A stretch of DNA of 64,000 bases from Selaginella moellendorffii (taxonomy: Eukaryota; Plantae; Lycopodiophyta). Below the pieces are notes generated by a model. The model worked only from the letters and a program-made list of their open reading frames with translations, did not search any database and was not told the origin of the DNA. The stretch covers positions 442,964-506,963 of the forward strand of contig NW_003314351.1 in NCBI RefSeq assembly GCF_000143415.4. Direction: 5' to 3'. Made by a program: the position numbers and the translations under genes. This document shows positions 1,921 to 20,851 of this stretch, in pieces (within the stretch, counting starts at the first letter, position 1; the number at the start of each line of letters is the position of its first letter).

Positions 1921-2325
1921 GTCCGAGATGGACCCGAGACAGAGTCCGAGATGGAGTCCGAGATGGACCCGAGATGGAGTCCGAGATGGAGTCCGAGATG
2001 GAGTCCGAGATGGACCCAAGAGGGAGTCCGAGATGGAGTCCAAGATGGACCCGAGATGGACCCGAGACGGAGTCCAAGATGGAGTCCGAGATGGACCCGA
2101 GATGGAGTCCGAGATGAACCCGAGACGTAGTCCGAGATGGAGTCCGAGATGGACCCGAGATGGAGTCCGAGATGGAGTCCGAGATGGAACTGAGACCGAG
2201 ACCGAGACCGAGGCCGAGACTGAGACCGAGACCGAGTCTGAGGCCGAGACCGAGACCGAGACCGAGTCCGAGTCCGAGTCCGAAACCAGGACCAAGACCG
2301 AGTTCGAGCCCGAGGCCGAGTCCGA
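1921..2325. repeat. Compound minisatellite: 12-bp GAGATGGAGTCC / 11-bp GAGATGGACCC units grading into 6-bp GAGACC/GAGTCC units
   Basis: Seen directly. It explains the low-complexity ORFs (WSPR, RDGV, ETET, RPRP) in several frames. Confidence 0.95.
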
Positions 2326-2372
2326 ATACTAATACAGGTAGTTGGGTGAAAGCCCAAAGCGATCGTCCCCCA

Positions 2373-2408
2373 GGGGGGGGGGGGGGGGGGGGTTTGGGGG
2401 TTTGGGGG
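2373..2408 (+). repeat. Poly-G run (20 G) followed by two tttggggg units
   Basis: Seen directly. Confidence 0.9.
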
Positions 2409-5400
2409 TTCCAAAAGTATAGTACGGAGAGTGTGGGGGTTGGAGCCCAGTGGAGCCAGTTTAGCCAAGAAGGGCCAGTTTAGCCCAGGAAAGGCCAGTT
2501 TGGCCTGGGAAGGCCATGCCCAGTGTTGGGTGATGAACTGACCACTGGGAAGTCCAAGACTAGAGTGAATACAGACCGACAAGCGGGGTAGCTTGGTGAA
2601 GTGTTCAAGAGCCGGCTCTAGTTCCCCTGGGAGATTGAATGGTCAATGCTCCCAATCCAAGTATGGGTGGCACTACCTACTTGGATACCAGGCGTGGCTC
2701 AACGGAACCTCGTTCTAAGCCCATGGCTAGAGCACCCAAAGGTGGAAGGCGGGGAGAGTACCCATGAGGCCCGCGTAGGGCCACGGTGTTCTGAAATGGT
2801 GTCCCAAAGTCCTAGACTGTGGAAAGGAAGAGGAGTAGCCCTCTAGTGTGGTGACCAAGGACACAGTCACACGGTGAGGAAGTCCTAGAGGATAGTGGGA
2901 CTTAGTGGTCGGGCCGATGGGCCTTGATCCAATGGTGGTGTTGGCGAACACAGCCAAGGACAGAAAGGGACTTGGTGAGGACCGGAACGGAGATATTGGG
3001 GAAGGCTATTCCCCATATCTGTAGGCATCCTAAGGATGTTAAGGAGTGGATTTGGGATGATCACTCATGGACAGATGACCCAGTCTTTGAGAAACAGGAT
3101 TGGAATGTAGGTGGTGTCAGACCACCAATGTGACCAAGGTAAATGGGCATGGCCTTAGTGTAACGGGCCGATATGTTAGTGGTACCTTGGGGTGTTGATC
3201 ATGGGATCGGACACGTGGAGCACTTGGACCAAGTGCAAAGGTTTAGTGGCATGGATGCCATTTTTGGGGTTAGCATGCCCCAAGTCCTAATTGGGACTTA
3301 TGGAGGTCGTGAATGAGACTCCTCCAAGTGATCGGAGGTGTGGTTAAGTGATTAAAGTAAAATGGAAAAATTAGTCGCTTACATAGGATTACATGTTGCA
3401 ATATTGGCCCTAGATGACAAATCAAATTTAAAAAAATTGGTATACTCCTTCATGAGCTAGTCAATTGCTACAACACAAAGACCGTTAAAGGGATCTAAAG
3501 AGGGAATAAAGGAACAAAATAGAAACATAATAGCAAATAATAGGGAGAGAAAAGTGATAGAAGCAAAGGTAGAAGCAAAAGGATAAAGAAATACAGAAGT
3601 AAGAATGGAAGAAATATAAAGAAGTATGAGACAAGGGGGAAAAGCCTCAAAGTCACATTTGGCATAATTACATTGTAACCAATCCATATTAAGAATGAGG
3701 TTAAAAGCTTGACTTAGCATCATTTGCAATGACTAAAGTTCAAGCTCAAGATTGCTTATATGCACAATTAGGTTTGTTTCATCCCGTGCATATATATATA
3801 TATATATATACACAGCCATTGCCAGAAAGAATGAAAATTGGCTTTGTTCCACGATACAAATGTAGACAAAAACATGTGGCAACAGGCCAAACAATAGAAG
3901 ATAAACTTAAGCCTATATCAACTAATACGAAGAAAATAATAGAATACCTTTTGTTATAAAAATAAATTTGGAAAGAAAACACTAAATGAACCAGTGCTGA
4001 ATAAACCCCTCAATGATACTCTCAAAAGAAGGGAGGGGTCACCAACTTATTTGTGTAAAGACCCTCAACTACTCACGCAACTCCTTATTTCTTGGAAGCA
4101 TTTTGGTGCCTAGATCTTACACTATAACAGTACCAAAAAAACGTTATTAACACTAAAGTCTCCACTTAAGAAATAGAGAATGCCAATCCGAAAAATGCTA
4201 ATAACACTAATATGTGTGACCAACTTTATTACATGCCTAGTAGTGGACATCACTTGTCATTAAACTCAAATAGCAATAGCAACAACCTTCATTGGAATAG
4301 GACCACTTCCCATAAGAAGTGGAGCTAAAAGATGTACAACGAAAAATGGAAGATGTTAATGTTGTGCTATGCAAAAAGCATCATCAAGGGTGGTTAAAGT
4401 AAGTGCATATATAAATCTCATAAGATATTGATGAAGTGTTGTCCACAATATTCCCAACTTAATCCACTCCTATATATTTGGCTCTGCATGATGTAAGAGG
4501 CTTTGAAAATGAATGACAAATTACATCATTATCTCATATGGCTCTTACAATTGTTGGAAGGCATTATTAAAATTATTAATATGTCCAAATGCACATATGA
4601 AGGGGCCTAGGAAAATGCTCTAATCCACATAAGTGGTTGAACTCAAACCATTATATTACTACAACACCATCCTTTAAAAACACATAGAAACTTATGCAAA
4701 CACTAAGCATCATCCCAAGAATAATATGTGACAATCATTGTAAAGTGATTGAATCAATGGTAGGATTTCTTTTCCCAAGAATCAAGGAAAAAGGAAAAAA
4801 AAAGAAAAAAAAGAAAGAAAATTATAAGGAAAGTGAGATCTAGTTGATGCAAAGTTAGATTTATAAACTAAAATCCCAAATCAAAAACCTCGTCAGGGAC
4901 AATTAAAATTGCCCCTCATCTTCACCAATATAAGTGTATAAAATATATAAATGAAATATAGAAATGTGCATTAATTGTACACTTGGACCTTACAATAGCA
5001 AATTATTTTAATATTTAACATGTTAGCTGGTAGTGGATAATACCTAGAATATGCTCAGATATTTTAGTATATTTTAATTATTTAATGGTTAATATTTATT
5101 TAGATTGATCCTATGATTATAAATTATAATTTGAGCCTGTTATGTCTTCTAAATTATAACATTTTATTAAATACCTGGATAATTTCATTTCTAGTGAGGC
5201 AATTGTAGCTGAACCAAACTGATGCACACGTGAATATTAGGTGATGAGCATGCTTTCACTACCACCTCTCTATATAAAAAAGTGTCAAAATGTATGATAT
5301 TGCCACTCTTATTATCTTATCCAACAAATAAAGTGTATTCATAAGTATACCAATTGTTATATTAGGGCAAATGCTGTTCTAGGCAATTACAGTGGCAAGG

Positions 5401-6084
5401 CTCGATCAAACTATGTCACAACTTAGGATTTGCACATCTTTGTATTGTCTTGGATTTTCTTCATATGAGGCTAGTACAGAACCACAAGAATATGAACAAC
5501 TTTATACCTTTAAAATTTCCATTATTCTGCTAACATCTTTATAAAAAGTATAGTCATATCAAATCAGCTTCCATCAAGAAAATAAAACATTTACACATTT
5601 TGCCTTTGATAGAAGCTGTGGTGGTGGGGGCAATATGGTAGCCACAGAGTATTACTCCATTTTTGCTCGATGAAGCTAGAAGTTCTGGTGGTGGTAGCAA
5701 TATAGGAGCCACAGAGCATTGCTCCCATTGCTGGATGAGCTAAAAGATATTCCTGCTCAAGATTATAAAAATTTATTTTGTGTGCTAATGTTAAATAGCC
5801 CATGTCTTTCTTTAACTTGTAATGCTTTGGGCTAAGCAGGTACAATATACTACAATTAGATATTTCCAAGGAACCGACTTGGAAATGAGCACGAAATGCA
5901 TAATTTAACGCACAGGCGCTGTCGTTTTTGGGTCCCGAACCTTGACCGGAAGCAGCTTGGTAGTAGCTGCCTAGGTATTTTTCTTGGCGCTTAAGCTTTC
6001 TTCTTCCAATAAAGGTCGCTCCCACTCCCAGGTACATAGAGTTCCACTTTGTCCTTCTTTGTTTTTTCGAGCTCGAGCTCGAGA

Positions 6085-9000
6085 ATGGTAGAAAAGGATG
6101 TCCCTGGATCGAACGCAGCAGTGCAAGATGATCAGTCCGCGACTCAAGTTGTCCCCATTTTCAAGCTCTTCAGCTTCGCGGATTGGATGGATGTTCTCCT
6201 CATGGTGCTGGGAACTGCCGGCGCTGTGGCAAACGGAATGACGATGCCGCTCATGGCGATTGTCTTCGGCGAGCTGACGGATTCGTTTGGGCAGAACGTG
6301 AGCGATGTGGATCGCCTCTCCAGGGAAGTCTCCAAGGTAAAGTCATTCATTCTCGATCGAGAAGAAGAAAAAAAAGAAAAAAAAATTAAAAAAGAAAGAA
6401 GGAGAAGCGGAATATATTTCCATAGCTTTACTCTGTTTCTAAGTTTCTCGACGGACTGAATCAGGTGTCGTTAAGGTTTGTGTATCTCGGGATCGTGGCT
6501 TCTATTGGATCTTTGTTTCGTAAGTATTATTTCCACGTTTTTGTACGCAGTGTGATCGTGCGGCGGTTTTACAGAACTTGCGTGCTGGATGTGCACCGGA
6601 GAGAGACAAGCCGCGAGGATTCGAAACTTGTATCTCAAAGCCATTCTGCGACAAGACATCTCCTTTTTTGACAAAGAAACCAAGACGGGAGAAGTGATCG
6701 GTCGAATGTCCGGAGATACAATCCTCATACAAGATGCAATGGGTGAAAAGGTACAGAAAAACTCGAGAAACGAAATGTGTGAGCGTTCTTCTTTCTCGCA
6801 GGTGTCGAAGCTCATCCAATTCACCACCGCTTTCTTTGCTGGTTTTGTAATTGCCTTCATCAAAGGCTGGAAGCTCACGCTAGTGATGATGTCCGTGATG
6901 CCTCTGCTCGTTTTTGCTGGAGGGATGATGGCCAATCTCATGTCCAAAATGGCGAGTCGAGGCCAGAAAGCTTACGCCGAGGCGGCAGTTGTGGTGGAAC
7001 AAGTCACTGGAGGCATCAGAACTGTAAGTGTTTTTTCTTTGCACCAGAAGGTCCAAGATGAAACTTCCAGGCCAGCAGGAATTTCACGACTTTTTTTACA
7101 GGTGGCTTCGTTTACTGGCGAGCGTAAGTCCATGGCTGACTACGAGACAGCACTTACGAAAGCGTACAAAGCTGGAGTTTTTGAAGGAGTCGCATCGGGA
7201 GCTGGCCTTGGTTTCACGCTGTTCACCATGTTTTCCAGCTATGGTCTAGCGCTGTGGTATGGATCAAAGCTGGTTTTAAACGGTGGATACTCGGGTGGAG
7301 ATGTCATCAGTGTCTTGTTTGCTGTGCTCACCGGAGGCATGTAAGTGTTTTAGAACGTTTCAGAAGCAGCAAACCTTTCTCTTTTGTCAGGTCTTTGGGA
7401 CAAACTTCACCCAGTATTACTGCGATAGCATCCGGAAGAGCTGCAGCTTACAAGATGTTCGAAGTCATTCGTCGAGTCCCTCTGATTGATGCCTTTGACA
7501 TGAGCGGACAAACACTAGAGAGTGTGAAGGGCGATATCGAGCTTCGGGACGTCACCTTTTCGTATCCCACACGTCCAGATGTCCCGGTGTTTACGAGCTT
7601 CAATCTGGAAATCCCGTCTGGGACAACAGTTGCTTTGGTCGGGGAGAGTGGCAGCGGCAAGTCGACGGTGATAAGCTTGATCGAGAGGTTTTATGATCCT
7701 CAGGCTGGCGAGGTTTTGATCGATGGTGTCGACATCCGGAAGCTCCAGCCGAAGTGGCTACGCCAACAGATCGGACTTGTCAGCCAGGAACCGGTTTTGT
7801 TTGCAACCTCCATCAGAGAGAACATTGCTTATGGCAGAGAGGGAGCGACTGAGGAGGAGATTATGGAAGCTGCTCGCCTTGCGAACGCTGCGAAGTTTAT
7901 CAGCAAGATGCCAAAGGTAAATGCTTTCAAAGTTTTCATGGAAAGTTCCATAGTTATCTTTTGTTTGCTTCCAACCTGTAAGGGATTCGACACACAAGTT
8001 GGAGAGCACGGGACTCAGCTTTCTGGCGGACAGAAGCAAAGGGTGGCCATCGCTAGAGCTATACTAAAAAATCCTCGCATTCTTCTGCTGGACGAGGCAA
8101 CCAGCGCTTTGGATGCCGAGTCGGAGCGAGTGGTGCAGGAAGCGTTGGACCGGATCATGGTGAACAGGACAACAGTGATCGTCGCTCACAGGCTTTCCAC
8201 GATCAAAAACGCAGACTGCATCGCTGTTGTTCAAAGAGGAAGCATTGTGGAGAAAGGTAAATCTACACCTTTTGAAACTCTAGATCATCCAAGTCACGCT
8301 CGTATCTTTGCAGGGACACACTCGGAACTTATTCAGAGGCCAGATGGAGCTTACGAACAACTAGTTCGTCTCCAAGAAATGCACGACGTGAAGTCAAACC
8401 AGAGCTTGAGCGCTGCTCAAGCAATCGATCCAGACGAGGTGGTAGTAATCGATCAAGAGCTGGATGAACGAAGGCTGAGCAGGAGTAGCAGCCGTGGATC
8501 GTTTGGAAGCAAACGCAACGTAACTCGAAGTTCGTTCTCCTTGACTAGAACGGCGAGTGTCGATCCAGAGCAGGCCGACAAGAGCGACGGAAAAACAGGA
8601 GTAACCCGGAACAACTTTCTTCGCCTCGCAGCTATGAACAAGCCAGAAACACCGGTTTTCATCGTTGGAGCTCTTGCTTCCACTGCAAACGGTGTGGTGT
8701 TTCCGGTCTTCGGCCTGCTTCTGTCCAACATTTTCGGAGTTTTGTACAGCACGAACCGGCACAAGCTGAGACACGACGCCAACTTCTGGGCGAGCATGTT
8801 CCTGGTACAAGCTTCCGCGTGCTTGATCATCTCTCCCATACAACTCAGCGCCTTCGGATTCATCGGCCAGAGACTCATTCGACGAGTCCGGAAGAGATCG
8901 TTCGAGTCCGTTGTTCGTCAGGAGATTGCCTGGTTTGACGATCCGTCCAATTCAAGGTAGCTTTGACTAGCTCTATTTCGAAAGTTTTTCTAAGGTTTTT

Positions 9001-10613
9001 CTTTCCTTTTTTCTAGTGGAGCAATCAGTTCCCGGCTCTCAGTAGATGCTGCTCATGTCAAGAGCATGGTTGGCGATTCCTTGTCGCTGCTGCTGCAAAA
9101 TCTGGCGTCACTCATTGCAGGGCTCGTCATCGCGTTCACTGCAAACTGGATATTGTCACTTGTTGTCTTGGCACTTATTCCACTACTCGGAGCTCAAGGC
9201 GTAGTCCAGACCAAGATGATGATCGGTTTCAGCAAAGATGCGAAGGTAAGTTTTCCACCTTCGTTTTATGTTTTGCTCGATCAATGTTTTGCTTACATCC
9301 TCCTTGTATGCACGCACAGGTCATGTATGAAGAGGCGACAAAAATCGCAAACGATGCAGTGAGCAGCATTCGTACTGTGAGCTCTTACTGCCTCGAAGCT
9401 AAAATGCTGGAGCTTTACAAAACAAAGTGCTCCATCCCAACCAGGAACGGGATTCGCAACGGAGTTGTGAGTGGAATCGGTCTCGGCATTTCGAGCTTCG
9501 TTATGTTCGCAGCCTATGCCTTCAGCTTTTGGTTTGGAGCTCGTCTTGTCAGGGAGGGCAAAACAAGCTTCCAAAACGTGTTTAAGGTAAGCACCTTGTT
9601 CATGGTTGATCTTATTTCGTGATCCTCCAGGTGTTCTTTGCGATCACGATGAGCGCATTCGGCATAGCTCAGGGAGTGTCGCTCGCCCCCGACTTTGCAA
9701 AGGTGAAATCGGGAGTGAACTCGATCTTCGCGACTCTGGACAGGAAATCAAAGATCGATCCTTCCAACGAGGAAGGCAAGACGCTGGAATCGACTCGCGG
9801 AGACATCGAGTTCCGGAACGTGAGATTCCGCTATCCAGCGCGGCACGAGGCGGAGATCTTCCGAAACTTGAGCTTTTCCATCCCCGCGGGCAAGGTACGT
9901 CTCCCTTTTAAATTTTCGGTTTTGAAATTTCCCGGGCTGTTTTCTGTGTTGCGCAGACCATGGCGCTGGTCGGCGAGAGTGGAAGCGGCAAATCCACAGT
10001 CATCTCGCTACTGGAGAGGTTCTACGACCCAGATTCGGGCAGCATTCTCATCGATGGCGTCGACATTCGATCGCTCAAGCTACGCTGGCTCCGACAAAAC
10101 ATCGCCCTGGTCAGCCAAGAGCCCACACTGTTTAGCGGCAGCATCCGGTCCAACATCGCGTATGGGAGAGAGAGCGGCGCGCCCGTGAGCGAGGAAGAGA
10201 TCACCGCGGCCGCCAAGGCCGCCAACGCGCACAGCTTCATCTCCGCGATGCCGGGAGGATACGAGACCGAGGTCGGGGAGAGGGGAATCCAGCTCTCGGG
10301 CGGGCAGAAGCAGCGGATCGCGATCGCGAGGGCGGTGCTCAAGGAGCCCAAGATCTTGCTCCTGGACGAGGCAACGAGCGCGCTGGATGCAGAGTCGGAG
10401 AGGCTGGTCCAGGAAGCGCTGGATCGGATCATGGTGGGCAAGACGAGCGTGGTTGTGGCGCATCGATTGTCCACGATTGTGGGCGTGGACATGATTGCGG
10501 TGGTGAAGAATGGAGGGATTGTGGAACAGGGCAGCCACGAGGAGCTCATCACAAAGCCCAATGGCGCCTACGCTACGCTGGTCAAGCTCCATCGCCACAA
10601 GCCAGCAAGCTAG
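6085..10613 (+). CDS. ABCB: Full-length ABCB (MDR/P-glycoprotein) transporter, ABCB4/11/21-like, multi-exon
   Basis: KLFSFAD..D N-terminus, [10 protein letters not shown], two NBDs with Walker [10 protein letters not shown], signature LSGGQKQR and Walker [12 protein letters not shown]; TMD-NBD-TMD-NBD joined across short GT-AG introns. Confidence 0.95.
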
Positions 10614-10666
10614 GACCCTAGCCGTATACATTTTTCCAACGGTTGCGATACTTTAGAATAGATATT

Positions 10667-11869
10667 TTAGATTTTGGAAAGGAGCTGAGAGTTCTTGTAG
10701 ATCGAACCAAATCGGCGTGTCGCCTCCACGATTCCCAGCAGGATCTTCACATTCTTGGCGGGGAAGCGCTCGAGCAGCGCCTCCCGGGCTCGATTCGCGA
10801 GCTCGTCTCGCAGCTGCGCGCTCCTCTCGGCTCCCACCAGCGTCAAGTATGTTGTCTTGCGATTCTTGACGTCACTACTCGCGTCCTTGCCCATCTCCTC
10901 CGCCGTCATGGTCGCGTCGCTTAGATCGTCGTTCACTTGCCACATGAGGCCGAAATATCGCCCAAATCTCCTCAGGCCCTCAATCTCCTCCTCGCCGGCG
11001 CCGCCGACTATAGCCCCCGCTACCAGCGGCAGCTCGAAGAAGGAGCTCGTCTTGTTGGTGTTCTTGGCGTTGAGTTCCTCGAGTGTTTCCAAGCTCTCTC
11101 CCTTCTTGACGTCGTCGTACTGTCCATACACAAGCCTCTGCATTGAGAGAGAGAATTCCTTGACCAGCCTCAGCCTCTTGTCCGTCGAGACGAGCGTGGA
11201 GTCCACGACCGTCCCGAAAGCCAGTGCCGCAAGTGCTTGTGCCGCGAGGATAGCAGTGGTGTCGTCGAACTCTACGTGTGCCGCAGCCCTTCCTTTCCTC
11301 GTCCTTGCATTGTCCATGCATGGGAGGTCGTCAGTCGTGAGTATGATCGCCATCCACATCTCGATGGTGCAAGCCATTGGAAGTGCTGCGTGGCGGTCTC
11401 CTCCGACCAGCTCGCAAGCAGCGATACACAGCGATGCCAAGTGCCTACCTTCTTCGTCCGCTGTGCAGTAGCGTATTGCTTTGTGGAGTTGTGCCGGGCA
11501 TGATTTGACGAGGTTCGACATGATTCTGTCCAGCTCCTCCTCGATCATCTCGCCTCTGGAGCTAAGGTACTTGTAGAGCTGCATGATTTGCTCCTTGTTT
11601 GCTGTATTGCTGCTGCTGCTGCTGCTCAATGGTGCCTCTGTTGTTGCAGAGCGGCACTGGAAGTGGATGAATTTTTCTGCTCTGCTCGCCGGTGAGCACG
11701 AACTTTGGATGTGTTTCGTGCTTCTGATTGAGGAGAAGCTCGCTCTAGAACCACCAATCGCATTGGAACTTGAACAACACCTTTTGAGGTACGGGGAACT
11801 TTTACCGTTGCTGCGGATTGCTGACGGTGATGTTGCAGAGCAATAGCGAGCGTGAAAACGTTCTGTCAT
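10667..11869 (-). CDS. Intronless, divergent GGPP synthase-like (trans-isoprenyl diphosphate synthase fold) protein with probable plastid transit peptide
   Basis: LCIAACELVGG (CxxxC), first Asp-rich motif DDLPCMD, GQ..D, KT, second Asp-rich motif NDDLSD, GK...D...K.TY; Ser/Arg-rich N-terminus. Canonical GGKRVRP and EMIH are missing. Confidence 0.9.
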   Translation of the reverse strand: MTERFHARYCSATSPSAIRSNGKSSPYLKRCCSSSNAIGGSRASFSSIRSTKHIQSSCSPASRAEKFIHFQCRSATTEAPLSSSSSSNTANKEQIMQLYKYLSSRGEMIEEELDRIMSNLVKSCPAQLHKAIRYCTADEEGRHLASLCIAACELVGGDRHAALPMACTIEMWMAIILTTDDLPCMDNARTRKGRAAAHVEFDDTTAILAAQALAALAFGTVVDSTLVSTDKRLRLVKEFSLSMQRLVYGQYDDVKKGESLETLEELNAKNTNKTSSFFELPLVAGAIVGGAGEEEIEGLRRFGRYFGLMWQVNDDLSDATMTAEEMGKDASSDVKNRKTTYLTLVGAERSAQLRDELANRAREALLERFPAKNVKILLGIVEATRRFGSIYKNSQLLSKI

Positions 11870-12476
11870 TCCAGCGGAGAAATCGCAAGCGATGAAGAAC
11901 GACGCGCAAGGGCTGAGGGACGCGACCGCCGTAGATAGATCTGCTAGAGGATGGAACCAAATGAATGCATTGCCGAGATTTCAATGCTGGAACTACGTGT
12001 AAGAGCCCGGGACGCAATCTTCATGCCTGCGTGTGTTGGCTTATCGTCTGGGTTCATCTCGATTACAGGCAAATCACGTTGATCACATCCTGTGGATTAA
12101 ACGCATCTAGGATGCCGCTGCAACGAACTTGTGAACTACCGGCTTGCAGGTCAGAGTTTGTTTGGACTCGACCTTCCACCAGGAAGGAAACTTCAAACTA
12201 AAACAAGGTTTTTCTTTCCCTTTTTCCCCGAATGTGTTGGGCTGACCTGATCCATGTCCCACTGGTTGACTAAATTCCGAGCAAATATTTCAGAATAATC
12301 ATAAAGAAGTCATGAGGATTTTCCACGTCTATGAGAAGTTTCCTAATGCGTCCCACTGCGGCTTCCATGGTTTTTCGCTAGTTTCCAGGCTACTTGATTT
12401 AAATCAACCTTGAGGTCAGAAAATTGATCGCCACACAACATTGCCATCACATAGTGGCACTTTTTCTGTGGACGCT

Positions 12477-13070
12477 ATGGCGGGGAGAAGCTCACTTCTC
12501 ATGAATGTGGCAGTGATGCTTGTGATTCTTCTGGTTTTGGTGCTGGAACCCAATGTCGCCAGCGGCAATAGATTGTTGCCAGCGAAACATGTCATCAGGT
12601 ATCATGAGGATCATAGCTTTGGAGTGGAAATCCCTGGTTTGATCAAATCGGAGCAGGCGACAGGGAGACGACAAACGCTAGAGCATAACTCTCCAGCAGA
12701 ATCTCGTCCCAAGTTCTTGGAGAAGACGCTATCTCCGGATGATCTCGAAATCACGGCACCAGCGGCTTCTCCGGATCACGCAGGTGTTGTCCAGAATGCA
12801 AATCTAGACGCTGTCGTGTCTCACAGCCCAGGCGAGAAGATCGCAATTGTGGTTGTGATCGTGTTCTTCGTGGCTTCGATCGGGGCGCTGGTGCTCTACG
12901 TGTGCAAGACGAAGAAATACATTGAGCACCGGCGGGCGGCGTCGCTGGCGAGATCGATCGAGCAGGGATTTGGTCCCAGGAGCATAGCTCAAGCATCCAC
13001 GTCCTCCTCGTTGTCGCCATCGTCCCCTGGATCATACTCTCCACCGCATCCACAACTATCAAGTTCGTGA
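12477..13070 (+). CDS. Small type-I single-pass membrane protein of unknown function
   Basis: Intronless ORF with a hydrophobic signal peptide (VAVMLVILLVLVL), polar ectodomain, TM helix IAIVVVIVFFVASIGALVLYVC followed by basic KTKK and a Ser/Pro-rich tail. Confidence 0.7.
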   Translation: MAGRSSLLMNVAVMLVILLVLVLEPNVASGNRLLPAKHVIRYHEDHSFGVEIPGLIKSEQATGRRQTLEHNSPAESRPKFLEKTLSPDDLEITAPAASPDHAGVVQNANLDAVVSHSPGEKIAIVVVIVFFVASIGALVLYVCKTKKYIEHRRAASLARSIEQGFGPRSIAQASTSSSLSPSSPGSYSPPHPQLSSS

Positions 13071-13404
13071 TCCATGGGCTAGAATTATATCTATCGGGGA
13101 GATCCATGAGCTCGCTAGATCTATCGATCGATCGATCGATCGGGATCGGGGAAGAAAATCTGGTACTGTTGCTGTGAATTTTTTTCTTTTCTTCGCCGCC
13201 ACGATTTGCAAGATTTTGCTTATCGACGGTTCAAGGAGTTGTTAATAATAATGTTGCAAACCCTAAGGGCAAACGTGGCAGGGAATCTTGCTTAAATTAT
13301 CCACCTAAAAGCAGAGGGTCTTGTGTGCGAAGCTTTGTAGCGGCCGGACATAAAATCTCGCGCCAAAAAACTGGGAGCCTTAGGGTTGCTAGGGCGAAGC
13401 GGCG

Positions 13405-16400
13405 ATGGCGGGCGGCAAAAGGGGCAGCAAGAGGCAAGGTATGGTTTCGCCCCCTTTCCTCGTCCACAGCAATGGATCGGCGTGCTTGTCCTGGCAGCAT
13501 GGAGCGAGAGCGAGGATGAAGATTATCGCGCAGAAGACGATGGTGAGTTAATTTCTGTTTCCTTTTCTCCGTTTCACTTGTAGCTCACGATCCGCGCCAT
13601 GCAGCTAGCGGCAGCCATTCCGACGGCGAGTCCGTCGAATCGCATCGATCTGAGAAGATGGACCCATCAGAGGAGAGCTTCCAAAACGCCGAGACCAGTG
13701 ACGAAGAAGAGGCCAGTGATATCAGTGCTCCGGGCAAAGTAAAAATGGAGGAAGATGTGGACGTCAAGCCACTCTCTGTTGCCACAGCACCGCCGTTTCC
13801 AACGGTAATAGCTCCAAAGCGACGGTATGGCACCAGAGACGAGTTCGAGGACTGGACGGGGCCAAGCAGAAGGAAGAAAGCGAAAAAGAGCAAGAACGCT
13901 GTGCAAGACGAGGATGACGACGACAACTATGATCCCGCCACCGAGAACTTGGAATGGAAGCAGTGGGCTCGAGAGTTGGAGACGGATATAGTGAAGATAG
14001 GGAAATGCAGCAGATGGGGTGACGACGACATGGAAGAGGATCAGCCGAAGAAGAAAGTCCTGGCGCAGCACGAGACGCCATCGGAGCTCGTGTTTCCACT
14101 GCTGCCGTTTCAAGGGGAGTTTCTAACGTGGAGTTTGTCGCGGGAGGAGTCAAACATGCGGGGTGGTGTTCTTGCCGACGAGATGGGGATGGGAAAAACT
14201 ATCCAGGCCATCTCACTCATCATTGCAGGCAGAACAGCAGGACACGGGCACGACCCGAATGCTCCTGATGCGAAAAATCTCAACACGACTCTGGTGGTTT
14301 GTCCGGTGGTGGCAATCGAGCAGTGGAAGAGTGAGATAGAACGGTTCACCAAGGAAGGGACTTTGAAGGTGCTTATCTACCATGGAAACCGGAAGCATAT
14401 AACTGTCAAGGAGTTGGCCAAGCACGACGTGGTTTTGACGACGTATTCGATTATCGAGCACGACTATCGCAAGATCCTGCCCGACAAGCTGAGGTGCAAA
14501 TGGTGCCAGAAAGCTTACTCCGCGCAAGGGTTGGCGAAGCATTACAAGTATCACTGTGGACCCGAGGCCAAAAAGAGTGCGGCGCAATCCAAGCAGAAGA
14601 AGGGAAAAAAAAAGGAAGTGAAGAAGGCGGTGAATCAGAGGAAAGGGAGTGCGGCCAAAGATGATTTTTCGCTTCTGCATTCCGTGAAATGGGTGCGAAT
14701 TATCCTCGATGAGGTATGATACGTCCCAACTCTAGCGTGTGACTCTACCATACGGATTTCAGGCACACACGATAAAGGATAGAGCCTCCAATACTGCCAA
14801 GTCGGTGTTTGCACTGCAGTCTTGTTACAAGTGGGGCTTAAGTGGTACACCGCTGCAGAATCGCGTTGGCGAACTTTATTCACTTGTAAGGATATTTCAC
14901 GGTTGTTTTTTTCTTGGCTTGACTTTTTTTTTCCTTTTATCTGCAGGTTCGTTATTTGGAAATAAATCCTTATGCGTATTTTTTCTGTAAGAAGTGTGAC
15001 TGTAAATCGCTCGAATACTCGTAAGTTTCGATGTGTTGTTTTCTCTCGGATGTTGATGTTCTGTTGTAGGGCGACAATGTGCGATAAGTGTGAGCACGCC
15101 AGCACACTTCATTTTTGTTGGTGGAACAAAGTAAGTTTTGCCTGTATTATGGACACATTTGAACCGCTTGTTCTTTGCAGTTTATTGCTCAACCTATTTC
15201 AAGGTTCGGATTTCAACAGGGAGGTGGGAAATCTATGAAGTTACTGAGGCAAAAGCTGCTGGATGAAATGCTCCTGCGGCGGACCAAAATCGAACGTGCA
15301 GCAGACCTCTCTATGCCTCCAAAACTGGTGGGACTTCTCTTAATGTGTTTGTTTGATGAACTTCATTCTAAATGCGCTCTGGCCTGCAGTCGTTCGTGCG
15401 GAAGGTAGTTTTCGATGCCAAAGAGGATGATTATTATCAGTCTTTATACTCACAGAGCAAATCCGTCTTTAACACGTAAGTCTTAGATCTTTTCTAAACG
15501 ACGAGTTGACAATGCCGGGCTCCAGATACGTGAAAGAAGGATCTGTTCTCAACAACTATGGTCACATATTTGACCTGCTTACCAGATTACGCCAGGCAGT
15601 GGACCATCCTTACCTTGTCGTTCATTCTGCTACTGGCGCGTCGGGAGTATCTGTGACTACTCCTCTCTGTGTAATTTGTGACGAGGACTGCATTGATCCT
15701 GTGGTATGTAGTATTTTCTCCTTGGCAGCTCACTTCAACAATGTCTGCAGTCTGCAAAATGCAAGGACACGTTTTGTCGATCATGTTTGGAGAATTTACT
15801 GTCGGAAGGCTCCGAGGACACCAAGATAGCTTGCCCAAGATGCGAGACGCCTCTCACGGTTGATGCCAAGAGCTCAAAGGTTGTTGGAAAGAAGTTAACA
15901 GGCTATAGAAAAGGGAGCATCATCAACAGACTGGATTTGAATGATTTCGTTACAAGCACCAAAATCGAGGCTCTGGTGAGTAGCTGAACAAACCCACAGT
16001 TTCCTTGATCCTCATTGCCGATCGCAGAAGGAGGAAGTGAAGAAGATGATCTCGAAGGATACATCTGCCAAGGGTCTGGTATTCAGCCAGTTTACGTCAA
16101 TGCTGGACTTGATTGGATACTCTTTCGAACTCGTAAGTTCTAGCTCTGCCTTTGGAAGCTCTTTTTACTAGCCAGTTTTCTCATGCAGGCTGGAGTCAAA
16201 TGTGTAAAACTCGATGGTGGCATGTCCTTGTCTCAGCGAAGCACTGCCATTGACACATTTAGGAACGACCCAGAGTGTAAGCTCTTCCTCATGAGTCTCA
16301 AGGCCGGCGGCGTGGCGCTCAATCTAACTGTAGCATCATACGTAAGCTTCTTCTTGGCTTGTGCTGCGAGCTTAACGAACGTATCCTTTTTTGTTTTTGC

Positions 16401-16900: not shown

Positions 16901-19900
16901 TCATCCGCTCCAGAGCTCGGTCCCTGTTCCCCTCACAAGCACCACCCTTTGCAGTCCCTGCGTGAGCTCCTCGCAATACTCCATATACCTCCACGGCTCC
17001 ATTCCCTCGTAGTGATCCGGGAGATTGAGCAAGACGAGCTGCGCTGACTTGGATTGCTCCACGATAATCTCGTTTAGCTTCTTGGCCGAGTAGCTCTGGC
17101 TGAAAGTATGCCAGGTTCTCTTCATCGGCACCACGTTGATGTCGGGAGTGCTCCCCAGGAGCAGCGGCGAGCCGTGGAAGAGCTGGCCTTCGCTTGCAGT
17201 GCGGAACATCTTTCCTTCCCTGATTGGAGGCAGCTGTCCCGCGCTCTTGGCCCTGAAGATGTTTCGTCTTGCCTTCTCCTGTGCGAACTCGGAAGCCACC
17301 CCTTCCACTACGATCTCCAAGTCCGACTTGCTCTCTTCCTGTTCGTCATCACCCCCAGCAGCAGCATTGTGATTGTCGTGCTCTTCTTTGGAGAAACTCT
17401 CCGCCTTCTCCTCTGTCGCAACTTGCTGGTTGGCTGTCGAGCTCTCTGGCTCATCGTCATGCACAGACTCCGGCGACGCTTGACCCTCTACGGAGTGTGC
17501 TTTGGATGAGCGCTGAGCCCATCGAGGACGCCGGCTGATTGGTGAGGCGCCACGCAGCAAACTTAGCTCGCCAGGGAAGGCCCTCTTGAAAAACTTCTGC
17601 AGGGCCTTGTAGTTCCCACCTTTCCCGGGCTTGGTCTCCCTCTCGGCCCGTTTCCTGTGCGTCCAAACGAAATGTAACAAATAACGAAACCCAAGGAACA
17701 GCTTACCGAAACTGGGCAACTTCATTTGCATACGCCAGTGCCTCCTCCATGCGTATCGTGTTGTCAAATGTATAAGGAGCCAAATCCGCGTCCTCGAGCT
17801 CGAGAACTTCCACATCAGCTACAATGCGAACCTGAAAGTGAAATATGTTGAACTCTTGCACCGTATATGAGAATGCCATACCTTATCCAAAAGCTTGCGC
17901 AGATTGTTCTTGACCTCCTCTGAGTTGTCAAGTCTTTCCGCAACAGTGTGTACTCGCAATTTACATTTCCGCCAGACCTTATGCTGGTTTATCAAATGGG
18001 CCAGCATCAGTAGAAGGCCACCATCGTGGACAATCCACCAAACGTCAATGTTCCCCTCCTGCGTGCTTCCGTTGCTAGGGAACACATCCAAATGCATACA
18101 GAGCACCACTGCTTTATCTACAGCTCTGCATTCTCCCAAAGTTTCCAAGAGCACCTGCTTGAAAAAAAACCCATTCGTCTATCTTCCAGACTTGACACAA
18201 AGCAACATACCTCAGCACTGTTTTTCTCTTCTCCGTCTCGCCAGTTTTTTGGCCATCCCAGGAGCAATGTATTTGGTTCTAACGATCCCAAACCAGATGA
18301 TTGAATCGCGTAAGTTTTCCCCTCGCGGTAAGACGGCGCGACAAAAACGCGAGAAAAGCCAGTAACTTGAGCAGCTTGCATACAATTCTCAAGCTCTACC
18401 TGCAGTGAAAATAATTTCCGGTGTAGAGAGAACAGAAACAAGCATGTGATACATACGCTTTCTGCTGTTATTTGTGGCATCATATCCTCAAGTTTTCCTT
18501 CAAGAACGACACTAACGACGCATAAACCTTTACCCTGTTAAGGAAGACTTCAGAACACTCAAGTCTTCGTGACATGGTCAGTTACCTTTTTCAGCTGAGA
18601 TGCGAAGGATAAAAGTTCGTGCCCAGCATGAGCATCAGCGGACCACGAAGATCGTGGTTTAGAAAGGCATAAAAGCTGCGGTCTCCAATTGACCGTGTAC
18701 CGAGCCTCGCGACCGACAGACAAAATGCTCTGGACCGCCAATTGCCATCTTAATCCTCCTAATCCAGTTCCCCAGTCAACCTCAACCTGGAAGTAAGAAA
18801 CGAATTAGAGGCCTGCAATTTACCAAGACGTTCACTTATGAGTACCTGGCGGTAGTCTATGTACCCGTAAATAATCCCCACCACCACCATGGCAGCTAAA
18901 GCCCAATACCAGACTATAAAAAAGTTCATTGCGGAGCACAGGAAAAATCCTAGAAGAGCGAAGAACCAGTGGTAGTGTTTCCATTTCGGTCTCCAGCTGA
19001 AATGACGCCGAATAAGGCCTTTGAACTTTATAAGTGAAAGGGACGGGACATACCTTGGTGCTTGCATGATCGACAGTATGAAACACGAGAGGTTCAGTGC
19101 CGCGTAACAAGTAAGAAAACATATCGAAACTAGAGGGGCAATCTTGTCCAAACTTCCGATCATAGCAGCCATCATACACAGTATAGTAGTAAAGATCAGC
19201 GCCCTTCGGGGTTCGCCATTTTCTGTGGTAGAAGATAACCGATTCAGGAAAGGAATGATCCGGTCTCCAGCGATGGCCTGAAAGATCAAACGATCAGAAA
19301 GAAGGAACCAACAAGTCGTTGCCAGCAAAAAGAACTGACCTGGAGTAGACGAGGCGAGGTGATTAAGCATTGCAAAGCTTGTGCTAGCGAGGCAATGATA
19401 ATACCCAGCTGCGTCAATATTGGCAAGGGAAAGGCGACGTCTTTCATCGCCTGCAACCTTCCCTCTCCAGAATGCACGCGTCCAACATCCTGCCCGAGTA
19501 AGTACTTTCGGGTTCCAACAGCAGCCCACAAACCCAGATACGATGTGTAGATTATAAAGCTGATCACGATCGCTCCAAGAGTTCCAGACGGAATGGATCT
19601 CTCCGGCTGCCAGAGATTTTTTGCTCTATCTGCACCACTGTCAAGAACAGATGACATTAAGTTACAACAAGAGTTTTCACTTGAGAAAGCGGTTACCTGA
19701 GAATTCCAGTGAAGCATGGAAAGAAAATCGATAAAACGACTGAAAATGAAACACCAGGTTCATATCCTGGACCCCAGTTACTTTTGAATGTTTTCCACGA
19801 AAGTCCAGTTAAGCTGGGAGGTACATTTCCATTAGGCGCCGTAAACAAACCAAGGTAATACGACAGCATGGTATAAAGCACAACGAGGAAAAACGCAATG

Positions 19901-20851
19901 CCTAGCTTGGAAACAAATTTGATCCCAAAATAGACCTGTCAACACAAGAGAACCACGCAGTTCAGTGAAATCATTTGAGTCATGCCACAAGAACGAAATG
20001 AACCGAAAACAAAACTATTCCTACCAGTAGTCCAAGAGCAAAGAGTATGATCAGACCAATGATCCGATTTGCAGACGGAAAGCGAAATGCTGAGAAGGTA
20101 AATTCCAACATCTCCACGGCACCGAGTGCCTGCACAAAGACGGAAGCATAGCATTTATGAAGATCACGATTCACTGTAAGCTTGGAGTTCAGACCGACTT
20201 ACTTCGAGAACTGCAAGAAGCATTACTCCGATGTAGTACAGGCATCCAACTGCGCCTCCAAACTTAGGACCCAGCGCTCTCGATATCAGATAGCTGCCAG
20301 CCAACAGAAGAATGACTTTTAACTTCACGAGAACTCGACGACTTACTATGTGCCACCTTCTTCTATGGGACCATTTGTAGCGACAGCACTCAACGACATG
20401 GTTGTCAACAGCGCGCAGAGGAAGGAGATGATGGCCACCAAGAAGGATTGCCATACTCCAGCATTCCCAACGATGTAGAAGAACCTCAAGAAAATCAAAA
20501 CTCCTGAAAGCACACACGGGCAAATTGTGTGAGAATTGACAAAGAAAAGGAGATGGAAACCGGGAGCAGCTTACCCCACATATTTTCACAAGTCGGGATG
20601 AGCACACCAGCGTAAGTCCCGAGCCCGTCCTGGTCTTTTCTGCGGAACTTTCTCCATAAAGCTGTAAGGAAGCCGGGCTTCTCCTCCTCCTTGGTGTACG
20701 GTGGCGAGTTCTCTCTCATCTCTTGCTTAAACTCGGCCGTCCTCTGCAACGATTCCGTGGATGACGCCCTGGACGCGACCTTGTGTGAGTTGAAGCAAGA
20801 TTTCCCGGCAATGACCGGGCTGTCGGGCGGAAATGCTTGCGAGGATTCCAT
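16901..20851 (-). CDS. CCC: Cation-chloride cotransporter (SLC12/CCC), multi-exon
   Basis: LGTYAGVLIPTCENMWG, GGTYYLISRALGPKFGGAVG, FFPCFTGILSGADR, SIPSGTL, NWRPQLL, GLGSLEPNTLLLGWP, IDVWWIVHDGGLLL, LVLLNLP...VVLVRGTG. Confidence 0.93.

What the first reader, a model, noticed from the sequence alone, without database searches (positions are those of the whole stretch)
10667..11869. GGPPS-derived protein has lost its IPP-binding site but kept both metal motifs: candidate plant IDS-type terpene synthase
Seen: canonical plant GGPPS GGKRVRP is replaced by acidic DEEGRHLAS (~11433-11459), EMIH becomes EMWM, RRG becomes RKG, and SLIH before the first Asp-rich motif becomes ILTT. DDLPCMD (~11312-11332), GQxxD, KT and a second Asp-rich motif remain. 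That second motif changed from VDDILD to NDDLSD (~10916-10933), matching the NDxxS start of the terpene-cyclase NSE motif, although the final Glu is absent. Established: those basic residues and His bind IPP, and insect and rust-fungal IDS-like terpene synthases arose from IDS enzymes, with IPP-site erosion described for the insect ones. It is unlike a type-II small subunit because the second DDxxD is intact and there is only one CxxxC. Inference: an intact 400-aa, probably plastid-targeted enzyme that ionises GPP/FPP/GGPP to terpenes, a route separate from typical TPS and microbial-type TPS.
Basis: partly seen in the sequence, partly recalled or inferred. Interest (0 to 1): 0.85.

Follow-up and report, generated by a model that had tools for sequence, protein, structure and literature searches.

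The report
Selaginella GGPPS-like gene without IPP site
A spikemoss (Selaginella moellendorffii) gene copied from the enzyme that builds C20 isoprenoid chains has lost the pocket for the chain-extending unit but kept the metal site that activates prenyl diphosphates, so it may make terpenes by a route not reported for plants in the papers searched; function is untested and the plant's other chromosome copy is broken.

Summary

The organism is Selaginella moellendorffii. No protein lies between 100% and 41% identity. The nearest is one transcript from another sample (P0121), followed by two other atypical S. moellendorffii GGPPS-like proteins (P0128, P0387). All have lost the IPP-binding residues. 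These include the arginine whose single mutation turns a rust-fungus GGPPS into a nerolidol synthase. All keep 12 of 12 Mg/allylic-diphosphate ligands.

This pattern favours a non-elongating, prenyl-diphosphate-ionising enzyme and is the reverse of the type-II small-subunit pattern.

Several findings weaken the case at this locus:
- The ~97% identical second haplotype carries two frameshifts plus a truncated tandem copy.
- Allele divergence is neutral (pN/pS 0.97, against 0.11 in the adjacent ABC gene).
- RNA assemblies mostly show the broken allele.
- An antisense spliced RNA crosses the gene.
- No terpenoid genes lie nearby.
- The NSE-like "ND..S" is not conserved.
- The deep tree position is unresolved.

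The terpene-synthase reading is plausible (about 0.4) but unproven. The scan noted similar GGPPS-like genes at four other places in this genome.

The parts
10667..11869 (-). Intact 400-codon ORF of a GGPPS-family (polyprenyl synthetase) protein, intronless
   Evidence: ORF list; Pfam PF00348 E 1.2e-38; PDB relatives are the mint GPPS LSU and AtGGPPS; AF2 model and Foldseek
11585..11869 (-). Residues 1-95: Ser/Thr-rich, basic, acid-poor N-terminal extension, a presumptive plastid transit peptide
   Evidence: 31 S+T, 13 R+K and 4 D+E in 95 residues; pLDDT below 50 for residues 1-74; the sister transcript L002 also has an upstream in-frame extension
11432..11458 (-). Residues 138-146, D-E-E-G-R-H-L-A-S, in place of the canonical A-G-G-K-R-V-R-P (IPP-binding motif 1). 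The Lys and the last Arg are lost
   Evidence: Alignments; IBM-1 pattern fails; in the rust GGPPS the equivalent Arg (R81) is required for elongation (PMC7484799)
11312..11362 (-). Residues 170-186: EMWM (His of EMIH lost), I-I-L-T-T before the first Asp-rich motif, and DDLPCMD kept
11291..11299 (-). Residues 191-193, R-K-G (canonical R-R-G): first Arg kept, second Arg changed to Lys
11048..11053 (-). Residues 273-274, K-T kept (allylic diphosphate Lys), followed by S-S-F-F instead of A-A-L-L
10916..10933 (-). Residues 313-318, N-D-D-L-S-D: second Asp-rich motif DDxxD intact. The preceding Val is changed to Asn and the Phe of the FQ pair to Trp
10856..10891 (-). Residues 327-338, G-K-D-A-S-S-D-V-K-N-R-K: both diphosphate-binding Lys residues (K328, K338) kept
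   Evidence: K338 is Met in the broken allele
11094..11095 (.). Polymorphic 2 bp. Present here (frame intact) and absent from both copies on the other haplotype and from RNA contigs of four studies, where the absence gives a frameshift after residue 258
11792..11802 (.). Polymorphic 11 bp in the transit-peptide region. Present here; absent from the other haplotype and from the RNA contigs of runs X1 and X4
11567..11649 (+). 83-nt GT..AG intron on the plus strand, antisense to the ORF, seen in RNA contigs of two studies
   Evidence: joint 11564-11648, cut +2; sequence
9955..10613 (+). Last exon of a convergent ABCB-type transporter gene. Its stop codon lies 54 bp from the stop codon of the GGPPS-like ORF
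   Evidence: ORF 9960-10613; spliced RNA contigs; gene calls in L001

Best explanation
The ORF is the intact allele of a very fast-evolving, lineage-restricted offshoot of plastid GGPPS in Selaginella moellendorffii.

It belongs with a few GGPPS-derived proteins: the transcript P0121 from another sample, and the S. moellendorffii paralogues P0128 and P0387. In all of them the basic and His residues that hold the diphosphate of IPP have been replaced. Every ligand of the Mg2+/allylic-diphosphate site has been kept.

The most likely mechanism is as follows. After import into the plastid, the protein binds a prenyl diphosphate (chain length unknown; Ile at positions -4 and -5 before the first Asp-rich motif suggests C10-C15 rather than C20). 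It ionises the substrate on the trinuclear Mg cluster as an IDS does. Because no IPP is positioned to capture the allylic cation, the cation is quenched by water or by proton loss. That makes the protein an IDS-like terpene synthase yielding simple, probably acyclic, terpene alcohols or olefins.

Shown here: family membership, fold, motif pattern, conservation pattern, the null second allele, and RNA coverage. Inferred: plastid targeting, loss of elongation, and the terpene-synthase chemistry.

At this locus the gene is dispensable. The other haplotype of the same plant carries a doubly frameshifted copy plus a truncated tandem duplicate.
For: (1) Family and fold: PF00348 at E 1.2e-38, PDB relatives, a confident model and TMt about 0.9 to plant GGPPS/GPPS-LSU.

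(2) All six IPP-binding-motif patterns of Rebholz et al. 2023 (PMC10108439) fail in this protein, P0121, P0128 and P0387. DDx4D and DDxxD are kept. The canonical plant GGPPSs tabulated each match 3 to 5 of IBM-1 to IBM-5.

(3) Of 159 positions at least 90% conserved in 131 canonical sequences, this protein keeps 88. It keeps 12 of 12 Mg/allylic ligands (Fisher p 6e-4) and 0 of 6 IPP-site residues (p 7e-3). The same holds in P0121 and P0128.

(4) The last Arg of GGKRxR is lost in all of them. In a rust-fungus GGPPS the R81P change at that position alone abolished elongation and gave (E)-nerolidol (PMC7484799).

(5) The ORF cannot have drifted neutrally for most of its branch. In a simulation, 0 of 300 neutral runs stayed open at 40% identity, with a mean of 7.8 stops and no indels counted.

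(6) The family is under purifying selection elsewhere. P0128 against P0387 gives dN/dS 0.39. P0128 lies between two cis-prenyltransferase genes.

(7) At the allele differences that can be polarised (K338M, E348K, R362Q, D202N, S332N), the change lies on the broken copy, not on the window allele.

(8) P0121 is an expressed, full-length transcript from another sample. It shares derived features with the window protein (DDxSDATM.AE.MGKD, loss of G-D in LAGDALL, a C-terminal extension) and is its sister at 97/98 support.
Against: - No biochemical data exist for any member.
- The second haplotype (L001) has an 11-bp and a 2-bp frameshift in both of its copies. Allele divergence is pN/pS 0.97, against 0.11 for the adjacent ABC exon.
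- All RNA contigs crossing position 11094 in four studies carry the frameshift. The window allele appears in only one short contig (10741-10871, run X1).
- A plus-strand GT..AG intron shows that part of the RNA is antisense. The strand of the remaining RNA is unknown.
- The intact 2 bp therefore rests on the genome assembly alone.
- The terminal branch is the longest in the tree: 1.67 against a median of 0.51 under LG+G4, and 3.0 against 0.55 under C20.
- About 25 otherwise invariant positions are changed only in this protein.
- No terpenoid-pathway genes lie in the 64-kb window.
- The aromatic gains near the IPP site (W172, F277, F278, W310) and the Asn before the SARM are not shared with P0121.
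- The IBM patterns are strict, and many bacterial GGPPSs also fail them.
Confidence: 0.4

Rival explanations
1. A relic with no present function. The gene was a working member of the atypical GGPPS-like family for most of its history, but it is now being lost in S. moellendorffii. One haplotype is already frameshifted and duplicated. The other still has an open frame only because too little time has passed.
For: - The other haplotype carries two shared frameshifts plus a truncated tandem copy.
- Inter-allele pN/pS is 0.97, against 0.11 in the neighbouring gene.
- It has the longest terminal branch in the family.
- About 25 private changes fall at otherwise invariant positions.
- RNA assemblies are dominated by the broken allele, and antisense splicing crosses the ORF.
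- No orthologue above 41% identity exists among 15 billion proteins.
- Gene birth and death, with pseudogenes, is also seen in the paralogous locus L004.
Against: - The window allele has no stop or frameshift in 400 codons.
- All 12 catalytic ligands are intact.
- Polarisable allele differences fall on the broken copy.
- It retains as many conserved positions (88) as the expressed sister P0121 (89).
- With only 17 differences, a pN/pS near 1 is expected if the partner allele alone is decaying.
Confidence: 0.25
2. A non-catalytic or regulatory partner of canonical GGPPS. This would be a lycophyte analogue of GPPS small subunits or the GGPPS-recruiting protein, which changes the product length or location of the catalytic subunit through a heteromer.
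For: - Plant GGPPS-family members that have lost catalytic residues are typically such subunits.
- One CxxxC (C148-C152) is kept.
- The AU test does not reject placing this protein and P0121 with the SSU-II sequences (p 0.62).
- The rice recruiting protein is a detectable relative (5xn6_C, E 1.3e-30).
Against: - The losses mirror those of SSU-II. The SSU-II sequences P0076, P0214 and P0175 variously retain the K-R of GGKRxR, the His of EMIH or R-R-G, and all lose the second Asp-rich motif, KT and GK. This protein does the opposite.
- Keeping 12 of 12 Mg/allylic ligands in three deeply diverged lineages is not expected of a non-catalytic subunit.
- There is only one CxxxC.
- It is closer to large subunits than to small subunits in sequence: E 1e-50 against 1e-15 to 1e-30.
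Confidence: 0.15
3. A prenyltransferase with a new second substrate. It would ionise a prenyl diphosphate but transfer it to something other than IPP, either an aromatic/indole acceptor as in the fungal GGPPS-like PaxC-type enzymes, or a second allylic diphosphate as in the irregular coupling of chrysanthemyl diphosphate synthase.
For: - It fits the same split of kept allylic/Mg site and rewritten IPP site.
- The IPP pocket is remodelled with hydrophobic and aromatic residues rather than simply destroyed (W172, M173, F277, F278, W310).
- The paralogue P0387 sits among a PLP-dependent decarboxylase, methyltransferases, a UGT and a P450. P0128 sits between cis-prenyltransferases.
- Another first-stage note in this genome proposed an indole prenyltransferase (s1-385054).
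Against: - No acceptor can be inferred from the sequence.
- The remodelled residues are not conserved between this protein and P0121.
- No such enzyme is known from plants (my own knowledge, plus the negative paper searches).
- This window has no biosynthetic neighbours.
Confidence: 0.12
4. Still an ordinary chain-elongating GGPPS/GPPS that binds IPP in an unusual way.
For: - Both Asp-rich motifs, Q311 of the FQ pair, one Arg in the GGKRxR region (R142) and Lys at the second RRG position remain.
- The IBM patterns are over-strict for many bacterial enzymes.
Against: - The Lys, the last Arg and the His that hold the IPP diphosphate are all lost, and acidic residues (D138, E139, E140) now sit there.
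- Loss of that Arg alone abolished elongation in a fungal GGPPS (PMC7484799).
Confidence: 0.05

Closest known systems
Plant plastid GGPPS / heteromeric GPPS large subunit (mint 3KRA/3KRF chain A/D; Arabidopsis GGPPS11 5E8L; type-II GGPPS)
   Same: Same Pfam family and fold. Shared features are the DDx4D first motif with Pro-Cys-Met, the DDxxD second motif, KT, GQxxD, GK and DK lysines, one CxxxC, an N-terminal transit-peptide-like extension and an intronless gene.
   Different: Identity is only 33-42%. GGKRxRP, the His of EMIH, the His before the FARM, the G-D of LAGDALL, the second Arg of RRG, the Phe of FQ and the C-terminal YRQN end are all changed. There is a 14-residue C-terminal extension. 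The branch is the longest in the family tree.
IDS-like terpene synthases of insects (FPPS-derived; GGPPS-derived in Heliconius and termites) and of Melampsora rust fungi (GGPPS-derived ILTPS)
   Same: It is a recent offshoot of an IDS with the IPP-binding motifs substituted and the Mg/allylic site kept. The Arg equivalent to R81/KKxR is lost, acidic residues appear in IBM-1, and the family shows birth and death with pseudogenes (PMC10108439, PMC7484799, PMC13143122).
   Different: It is a plant protein derived from the plastid, bacterial-type (type II) GGPPS, with a transit peptide. No activity has been shown. Rust ILTPSs have an NSD triad in place of the SARM, whereas here the SARM is an intact DDxxD. 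The origin is independent.
Type-II GPPS small subunit / GGPPS-recruiting protein (AtSSU-II, OsGRP 5XN6 chain C)
   Same: It is a divergent plant GGPPS paralogue that has lost residues needed for elongation, and the first CxxxC is kept. Phylogeny cannot exclude proximity.
   Different: SSU-II sequences retain parts of the IPP site (the K-R of GGKRxR, the His of EMIH or R-R-G, varying by sequence). They lose the second Asp-rich motif, KT and GK and have two CxxxC. This protein shows the reverse pattern.
S. moellendorffii atypical GGPPS-like paralogues SELMODRAFT_133501 (P0128) and P0387, annotated as 'heterodimeric GGPPS large subunit 1'
   Same: Same species, intronless, the same set of lost IPP-site residues and the same 12 retained catalytic ligands. 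The DD-x-(S/A)-D-A-T signature is shared. The ML score is better when all four are held as one clade.
   Different: They are 48-50% identical to canonical GGPPS, against 33-42% for this protein. They are under purifying selection (dN/dS 0.39) and sit in metabolic gene neighbourhoods. The called models have no long N-terminal extension.

Membership tests
Polyprenyl synthetase (trans-IDS) superfamily, plant type-II GGPPS branch | Significant match to PF00348 and the all-alpha IDS fold | tested here: met
   E 1.2e-38, 133 bits against a cut-off of 27; Foldseek TMt 0.84-0.93 to plant GGPPS/GPPS-LSU
Polyprenyl synthetase (trans-IDS) superfamily, plant type-II GGPPS branch | First Asp-rich motif DDx4D with two extra residues, and second motif DDxxD | tested here: met
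   DDLPCMD at 180-186 and DDLSD at 314-318
Functional chain-elongating GGPPS | IPP-diphosphate ligands: Lys and last Arg of GGKRxR, His/Gln of EMIH, second Arg of RRG, and the IBM-1 to IBM-6 patterns | tested here: not met
   All six IBM patterns fail. The changes are K to G, R to L, H to M and R to K
Functional chain-elongating GGPPS | Condensation of allylic diphosphate with IPP in vitro | not testable with these tools
   Needs a recombinant enzyme assay
IDS-like terpene synthase (functional class known from insects and rust fungi) | Descent from an IDS with substitutions in the IPP-binding motifs while the metal-binding motifs persist | tested here: met
   criteria from PMC10108439
IDS-like terpene synthase (functional class known from insects and rust fungi) | Loss of the Arg equivalent to MliGGDPS R81 / the KKxR Arg | tested here: met
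   Leu144 (ungapped alignment) or Ala145 (gapped alignment) occupies that position. The Arg is also lost in P0121 and P0128 (PMC7484799)
IDS-like terpene synthase (functional class known from insects and rust fungi) | SARM converted to an N/DDxxS/TxxxD/E triad (the criterion used for rust ILTPS) | tested here: not met
   N313-D-D-L-S317-D-A-T-M321 has Met at the last position, and the sister P0121 lacks the Asn. The source paper reports that the triad is not strictly required
IDS-like terpene synthase (functional class known from insects and rust fungi) | Terpene formation from GPP, FPP or GGPP without IPP | not testable with these tools
   Needs GC-MS assays
GPPS small subunit type II / GGPPS-recruiting protein | Loss of the second Asp-rich motif | tested here: not met
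   DDLSD is intact here. P0076, P0214 and P0175 lack DDxxD
GPPS small subunit type II / GGPPS-recruiting protein | Two CxxxC motifs | tested here: not met
   Only C148-x3-C152 is present. The second SSU motif region reads L-V-A-G-A, without Cys
GPPS small subunit type II / GGPPS-recruiting protein | Phylogenetic grouping with SSU-II | tested here: inconclusive
   It does not group with SSU-II in the free trees, but the AU test does not reject the constraint (p 0.62)
Lycophyte atypical GGPPS-like clade (this protein, P0121, P0128, P0387) | Common origin shown by phylogeny | tested here: inconclusive
   This protein and P0121 are sisters at 97/98. Holding all four together gives a log-likelihood 6.9 higher than the free search, with AU p 0.62. 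Long-branch attraction is possible: without P0121 the window protein falls to the base of the tree

The most novel reading that the evidence does not exclude
Selaginella (and at least one other sampled plant, the source of P0121) harbours an independently evolved lineage of terpene synthases derived from plastid GGPPS. This would be a third route to plant terpenes beside classical TPS and microbial-type MTPSL, convergent with insects and rust fungi. The window gene would be its most diverged member, segregating as a functional/null polymorphism. Relatives placed next to cis-prenyltransferase genes may use cisoid substrates.
Probability: 0.25. Interest if true: 0.85.

Novelty: new variant of a known kind. 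Interest (0 to 1): 0.55.

Why it matters
IDS-to-terpene-synthase conversions have been shown in insects (including termites and Heliconius) and rust fungi. None of the papers I could search reports one in plants. A GGPPS-derived, non-elongating enzyme family in a lycophyte would add a further biosynthetic origin for plant terpenoids and would show that the conversion recurs whenever the IPP site erodes. It would also supply natural sequences in which the minimal changes separating coupling from ionise-and-quench chemistry can be read.

The question can be tested directly with a few recombinant proteins. For this particular gene the significance is lower. It is an orphan with a null second allele, so P0128 and P0387, which are under purifying selection and sit in metabolic neighbourhoods, are the better first targets.

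Tried and rejected
- Orthologue search. Two word-indexed searches and one exhaustive HMMER search found nothing between 100% and 41% identity, so no dN/dS across species could be computed. P0002 is only the frameshifted copy on the other haplotype.
- Deep phylogeny. The C20 mixture 'careful' tree did not finish in two 300-s runs. The LG+G4 tree and AU tests leave the position of the long branch unresolved. I therefore do not use the tree to exclude SSU-II.
- Origin of P0121. A paper search for SRR2103747 found nothing, and a look-up by sequence in the scan's notes was blank. The organism remains unknown.
- Gene cluster. Pfam scans of ten large ORFs in the window showed SNF2, SLC12, PPR, bHLH, helicase and ARM domains and no terpenoid genes. 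The cluster idea is rejected for this locus.
- NSE-motif reading of NDDLSD. Rejected as not conserved and incomplete.
- Aromatic lining of the former IPP site as a TPS hallmark. It is present here but not in P0121, so I give it little weight.
- Strand of transcription. It could not be settled, because only unstranded contigs were served.
- Pocket geometry. It was not analysed, because model coordinates are not exposed.
Full report
**1. What is in the sequence**

Window 10667-11869 (-) is an uninterrupted ATG-to-stop ORF of 400 codons. It matches Pfam PF00348 (polyprenyl synthetase) over residues 128-358 at E 1.2e-38. Its best solved relatives are the mint GPPS large subunit (3kra_A, E 4.5e-50) and Arabidopsis GGPPS, GFPPS and PPPS.

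- A-G-G-K-R-V-R-P is replaced by D-E-E-G-R-H-L-A.
- EMIH becomes EMWM, and SLIH becomes ILTT.
- DDLPCMD is kept.
- NDDLRRG becomes NARTRKG.
- GQxxD and KT are kept.
- VDDILD becomes NDDLSD.
- GKTAGKD becomes GKDASSD.
- There is one CxxxC.

An AlphaFold2 model built on a 60-sequence alignment has mean pLDDT 82. Residues 1-74 are disordered and residues 86-400 are mostly above 90. Its best Foldseek matches are plant GPPS-LSU and GGPPS chains with target-normalised TM 0.84-0.93. The first 95 residues hold 31 Ser+Thr, 13 Arg+Lys and only 4 Asp+Glu, the usual make-up of a plastid transit peptide.

**2. Organism and the second haplotype**

The closest database protein apart from the gene's own shorter model (P0001, 293 aa, starting at Met108) is SELMODRAFT_425252 of Selaginella moellendorffii (P0002). 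Its contig (L001, GL377638.1) is colinear with the window over 21 kb at 94-98% identity. I take it to be the other haplotype of the diploid assembly.

L001 carries a partial tandem duplication with two copies:
- Copy A is truncated and has several deletions. This is the copy modelled as P0002.
- Copy B is full-length.

Both copies lack 11 bp (window 11792-11802) and 2 bp (window 11094-11095), and copy B has 3 extra bp. The 2-bp loss shifts the frame after residue 258, before the second Asp-rich motif. In that haplotype the gene is therefore a pseudogene, and the lesion predates the duplication.

Window allele against copy B gives 13 nonsynonymous and 4 synonymous differences (pN 0.0142, pS 0.0147, ratio 0.97). 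The last exon of the adjacent ABC transporter gives pN 0.0020 and pS 0.0188 between the same two haplotypes.

Some differences can be polarised, either by copy A (D202N, S332N) or by family-wide conservation (K338M, E348K, R362Q). In each case the derived state is in copy B. The neutral ratio is therefore at least partly the decay of the broken allele, and nothing shows decay of the window allele. With only 17 differences this cannot be pushed further.

**3. RNA**

Contigs of four runs from four studies were laid on window 8500-13500. They remove the GT..AG introns of the ABC gene, so they derive from RNA.

They cover the GGPPS-like ORF. Run X1 covers 10674-12076 while barely covering the ABC gene, which argues for a transcription unit of its own.

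Every contig crossing 11094 carries the 2-bp deletion. X1 and X4 also carry the 11-bp deletion, and the single-base differences are those of copy B. Only one short X1 contig (10741-10871) is identical to the window allele.

Two runs show an 83-nt GT..AG intron on the plus strand (11567-11649; sequence). This is antisense to the ORF. In X2 a single contig joins the ABC exons to the region up to 11603, which may be a merge of convergent transcripts. Contigs carry no strand and drop minor variants. Sense expression of the intact allele is therefore neither shown nor excluded, and the intact state at 11094 rests on the genome assembly alone.

**4. Relatives**

An exhaustive HMMER search of 1.84 billion cluster representatives found the protein itself, P0002, and then a gap down to 41% identity.

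The top hit, P0121, is a 1,177-nt transcript contig of run SRR2103747, from an organism I could not identify. Its ORF extends upstream to a 377-aa protein with a Ser/Arg-rich N-terminus.

P0121 shares derived features with the window protein:
- the loss of GGKRxRP and of the EMIH histidine;
- LAGDALL changed to LAA(Q/T);
- the stretch DDxSDATM.AE.MGKD;
- a C-terminal extension.

The two are sisters with 97 (SH-aLRT, C20 quick tree) and 97/98 (UFBoot/SH-aLRT, LG+G4) support.

Two further S. moellendorffii proteins, P0128 (SELMODRAFT_133501) and P0387, are 80% identical to each other. They also lack the K/R/R of GGKRxR, the His, the second Arg of RRG and the G-D.

Holding all four as one clade gives a better likelihood than the free search (AU p 0.62). 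Holding the window protein and P0121 with three SSU-II sequences does the same (AU p 0.62). Without P0121 the window protein falls to the base of the tree. The deep position of this very long branch is therefore unresolved. Its terminal length is 1.67 against a median of 0.51 under LG+G4, and 3.0 against 0.55 under C20.

**5. Pattern of conservation**

Rebholz et al. 2023 (PMC10108439) formalised six IPP-binding motifs and showed that characterised insect IDS-like terpene synthases have lost them. The window protein, P0121, P0128 and P0387 fail all six patterns but keep DDx4D and DDxxD. The canonical plant GGPPSs tabulated each match 3 to 5 of IBM-1 to IBM-5. The patterns are strict, and many bacterial enzymes fail several, so I also made a position-wise count.

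Of 159 positions at least 90% conserved in 131 canonical sequences, the window protein keeps 88, P0121 keeps 89 and P0128 keeps 108.

All three keep 12 of 12 ligands of the Mg2+/allylic-diphosphate site. These are the three FARM Asp, the first Arg of RRG, the Gln and Asp of GQxxD, the Lys of KT, the three SARM Asp, and the GK and DK lysines. Fisher p values are 6e-4, 7e-4 and 8e-3.

They keep 0, 1 and 0 of six IPP-site residues. The residue sets were chosen from structural knowledge of FPPS/GGPPS and from the paper's Table 1, before counting.

In a rust-fungus GGPPS, mutating the last Arg of the KKxR/GGKRxR motif (R81P) alone abolished elongation and produced (E)-nerolidol (Wei et al. 2020, PMC7484799). 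That Arg is lost in all four proteins here.

**6. Has the ORF been under selection?**

A substitution-only neutral simulation was started from a family CDS. It needed about 463 changes to reach 40% identity and produced a mean of 7.8 stop codons. None of 300 runs stayed open. Most of the divergence therefore accumulated while an open frame was required.

Within the family, P0128 against P0387 gives dN/dS 0.39.

P0128 lies between two cis-prenyltransferase genes. P0387 lies among a UGT, PLP-dependent decarboxylases, methyltransferases, a lipase and a P450. A second, frameshifted GGPPS-like copy sits 9 kb away. Termite GGPPS-like terpene synthase families likewise mix genes and pseudogenes (PMC13143122).

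The window itself has no terpenoid neighbours. Its only close neighbour is the convergent ABCB transporter gene, whose stop codon is 54 bp away.

**7. Interpretation**

The combination of a selectively preserved ionisation site and a consistently rewritten IPP site is the signature reported for IDS-derived terpene synthases. It is seen here in three deeply diverged lineages.

It is the reverse of the SSU-II pattern. SSU-II sequences retain parts of the IPP site (the K-R of GGKRxR, the His of EMIH or R-R-G, varying by sequence) and lose the SARM, KT and GK.

I therefore rank a non-elongating, prenyl-diphosphate-ionising enzyme first, at 0.4. Simple terpene-synthase chemistry is the default outcome when no IPP is positioned. 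Ile at positions -4 and -5 before the FARM, where canonical GGPPS has Ser and Met, suggests a shallower pocket and shorter substrates. That last point is an inference.

The rivals are:
- a relic being lost in this species (0.25);
- a regulatory subunit (0.15);
- a prenyltransferase with a new acceptor, or irregular coupling (0.12);
- ordinary elongation (0.05).

The Asn is private to this protein, and the ninth residue of the putative motif is Met.

**8. Novelty and score**

No paper in the searchable library reports a plant IDS-like terpene synthase or these Selaginella proteins.

The scan's own notes list four other GGPPS-like loci of this kind in the same genome. My searches confirm the pattern for P0128 and P0387, which probably correspond to some of those notes.

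If the activity is confirmed, this would be a new plant variant of a kind known from insects and fungi. For this locus the null second allele, the ambiguous RNA and the orphan status temper the interest, which I set at 0.55.

Noticed in passing
L001:10070-13900 (GL377638.1, other haplotype), against window 10600-13300: The other haplotype carries a tandem duplication of about 2.5 kb. It repeats the 5' three-quarters of the GGPPS-like gene and, once more, the small membrane-protein ORF and spacer. The duplication arose after the two frameshifts, because both copies share them.
   Followed up: yes
window 11567-11649 (+): An 83-nt GT..AG intron on the strand opposite to the GGPPS-like ORF is removed in RNA contigs of two studies. 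This indicates an antisense spliced RNA, or read-through from the convergent ABC transporter gene.
   Followed up: partly
L003:8092-11829 (GL377684.1): The atypical GGPPS-like gene SELMODRAFT_133501 (P0128) is flanked on both sides by cis-prenyltransferase (PF01255) genes. This is probably the candidate cluster noted by the scan as s1-419983.
   Followed up: partly
L004:5600-30380 (GL377575.1): P0387 is an intronless ORF at 10001-10990, but its public gene model spans 10 kb. A second copy, 80% identical and with a frameshift near residue 272, lies at 19422-20365 within a repeated block of a PLP-dependent decarboxylase plus a methyltransferase. A UGT, a lipase and a P450 lie nearby.
   Followed up: partly
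window 12441-13070 (+): A 209-aa ORF for a small protein with one hydrophobic stretch and Ser-rich ends. It is covered by RNA contigs in two runs and shows several small indels between haplotypes. No family was assigned.
   Followed up: no
window 1-6000: GC skew is strong (+0.23) over 1-4000, followed by a low-GC block (0.34) at 4001-6000. This is unlike the rest of the window and may be a repeat or transposon.
   Followed up: no
protein P0134 (Victoria cruziana, CAN6459817.1): A water-lily GGPPS paralogue has independently lost part of GGKRxR and the first Asp-rich motif (Q-Y-D-F-P-S-M-D). Eroded GGPPS copies therefore arise repeatedly in plants.
   Followed up: no
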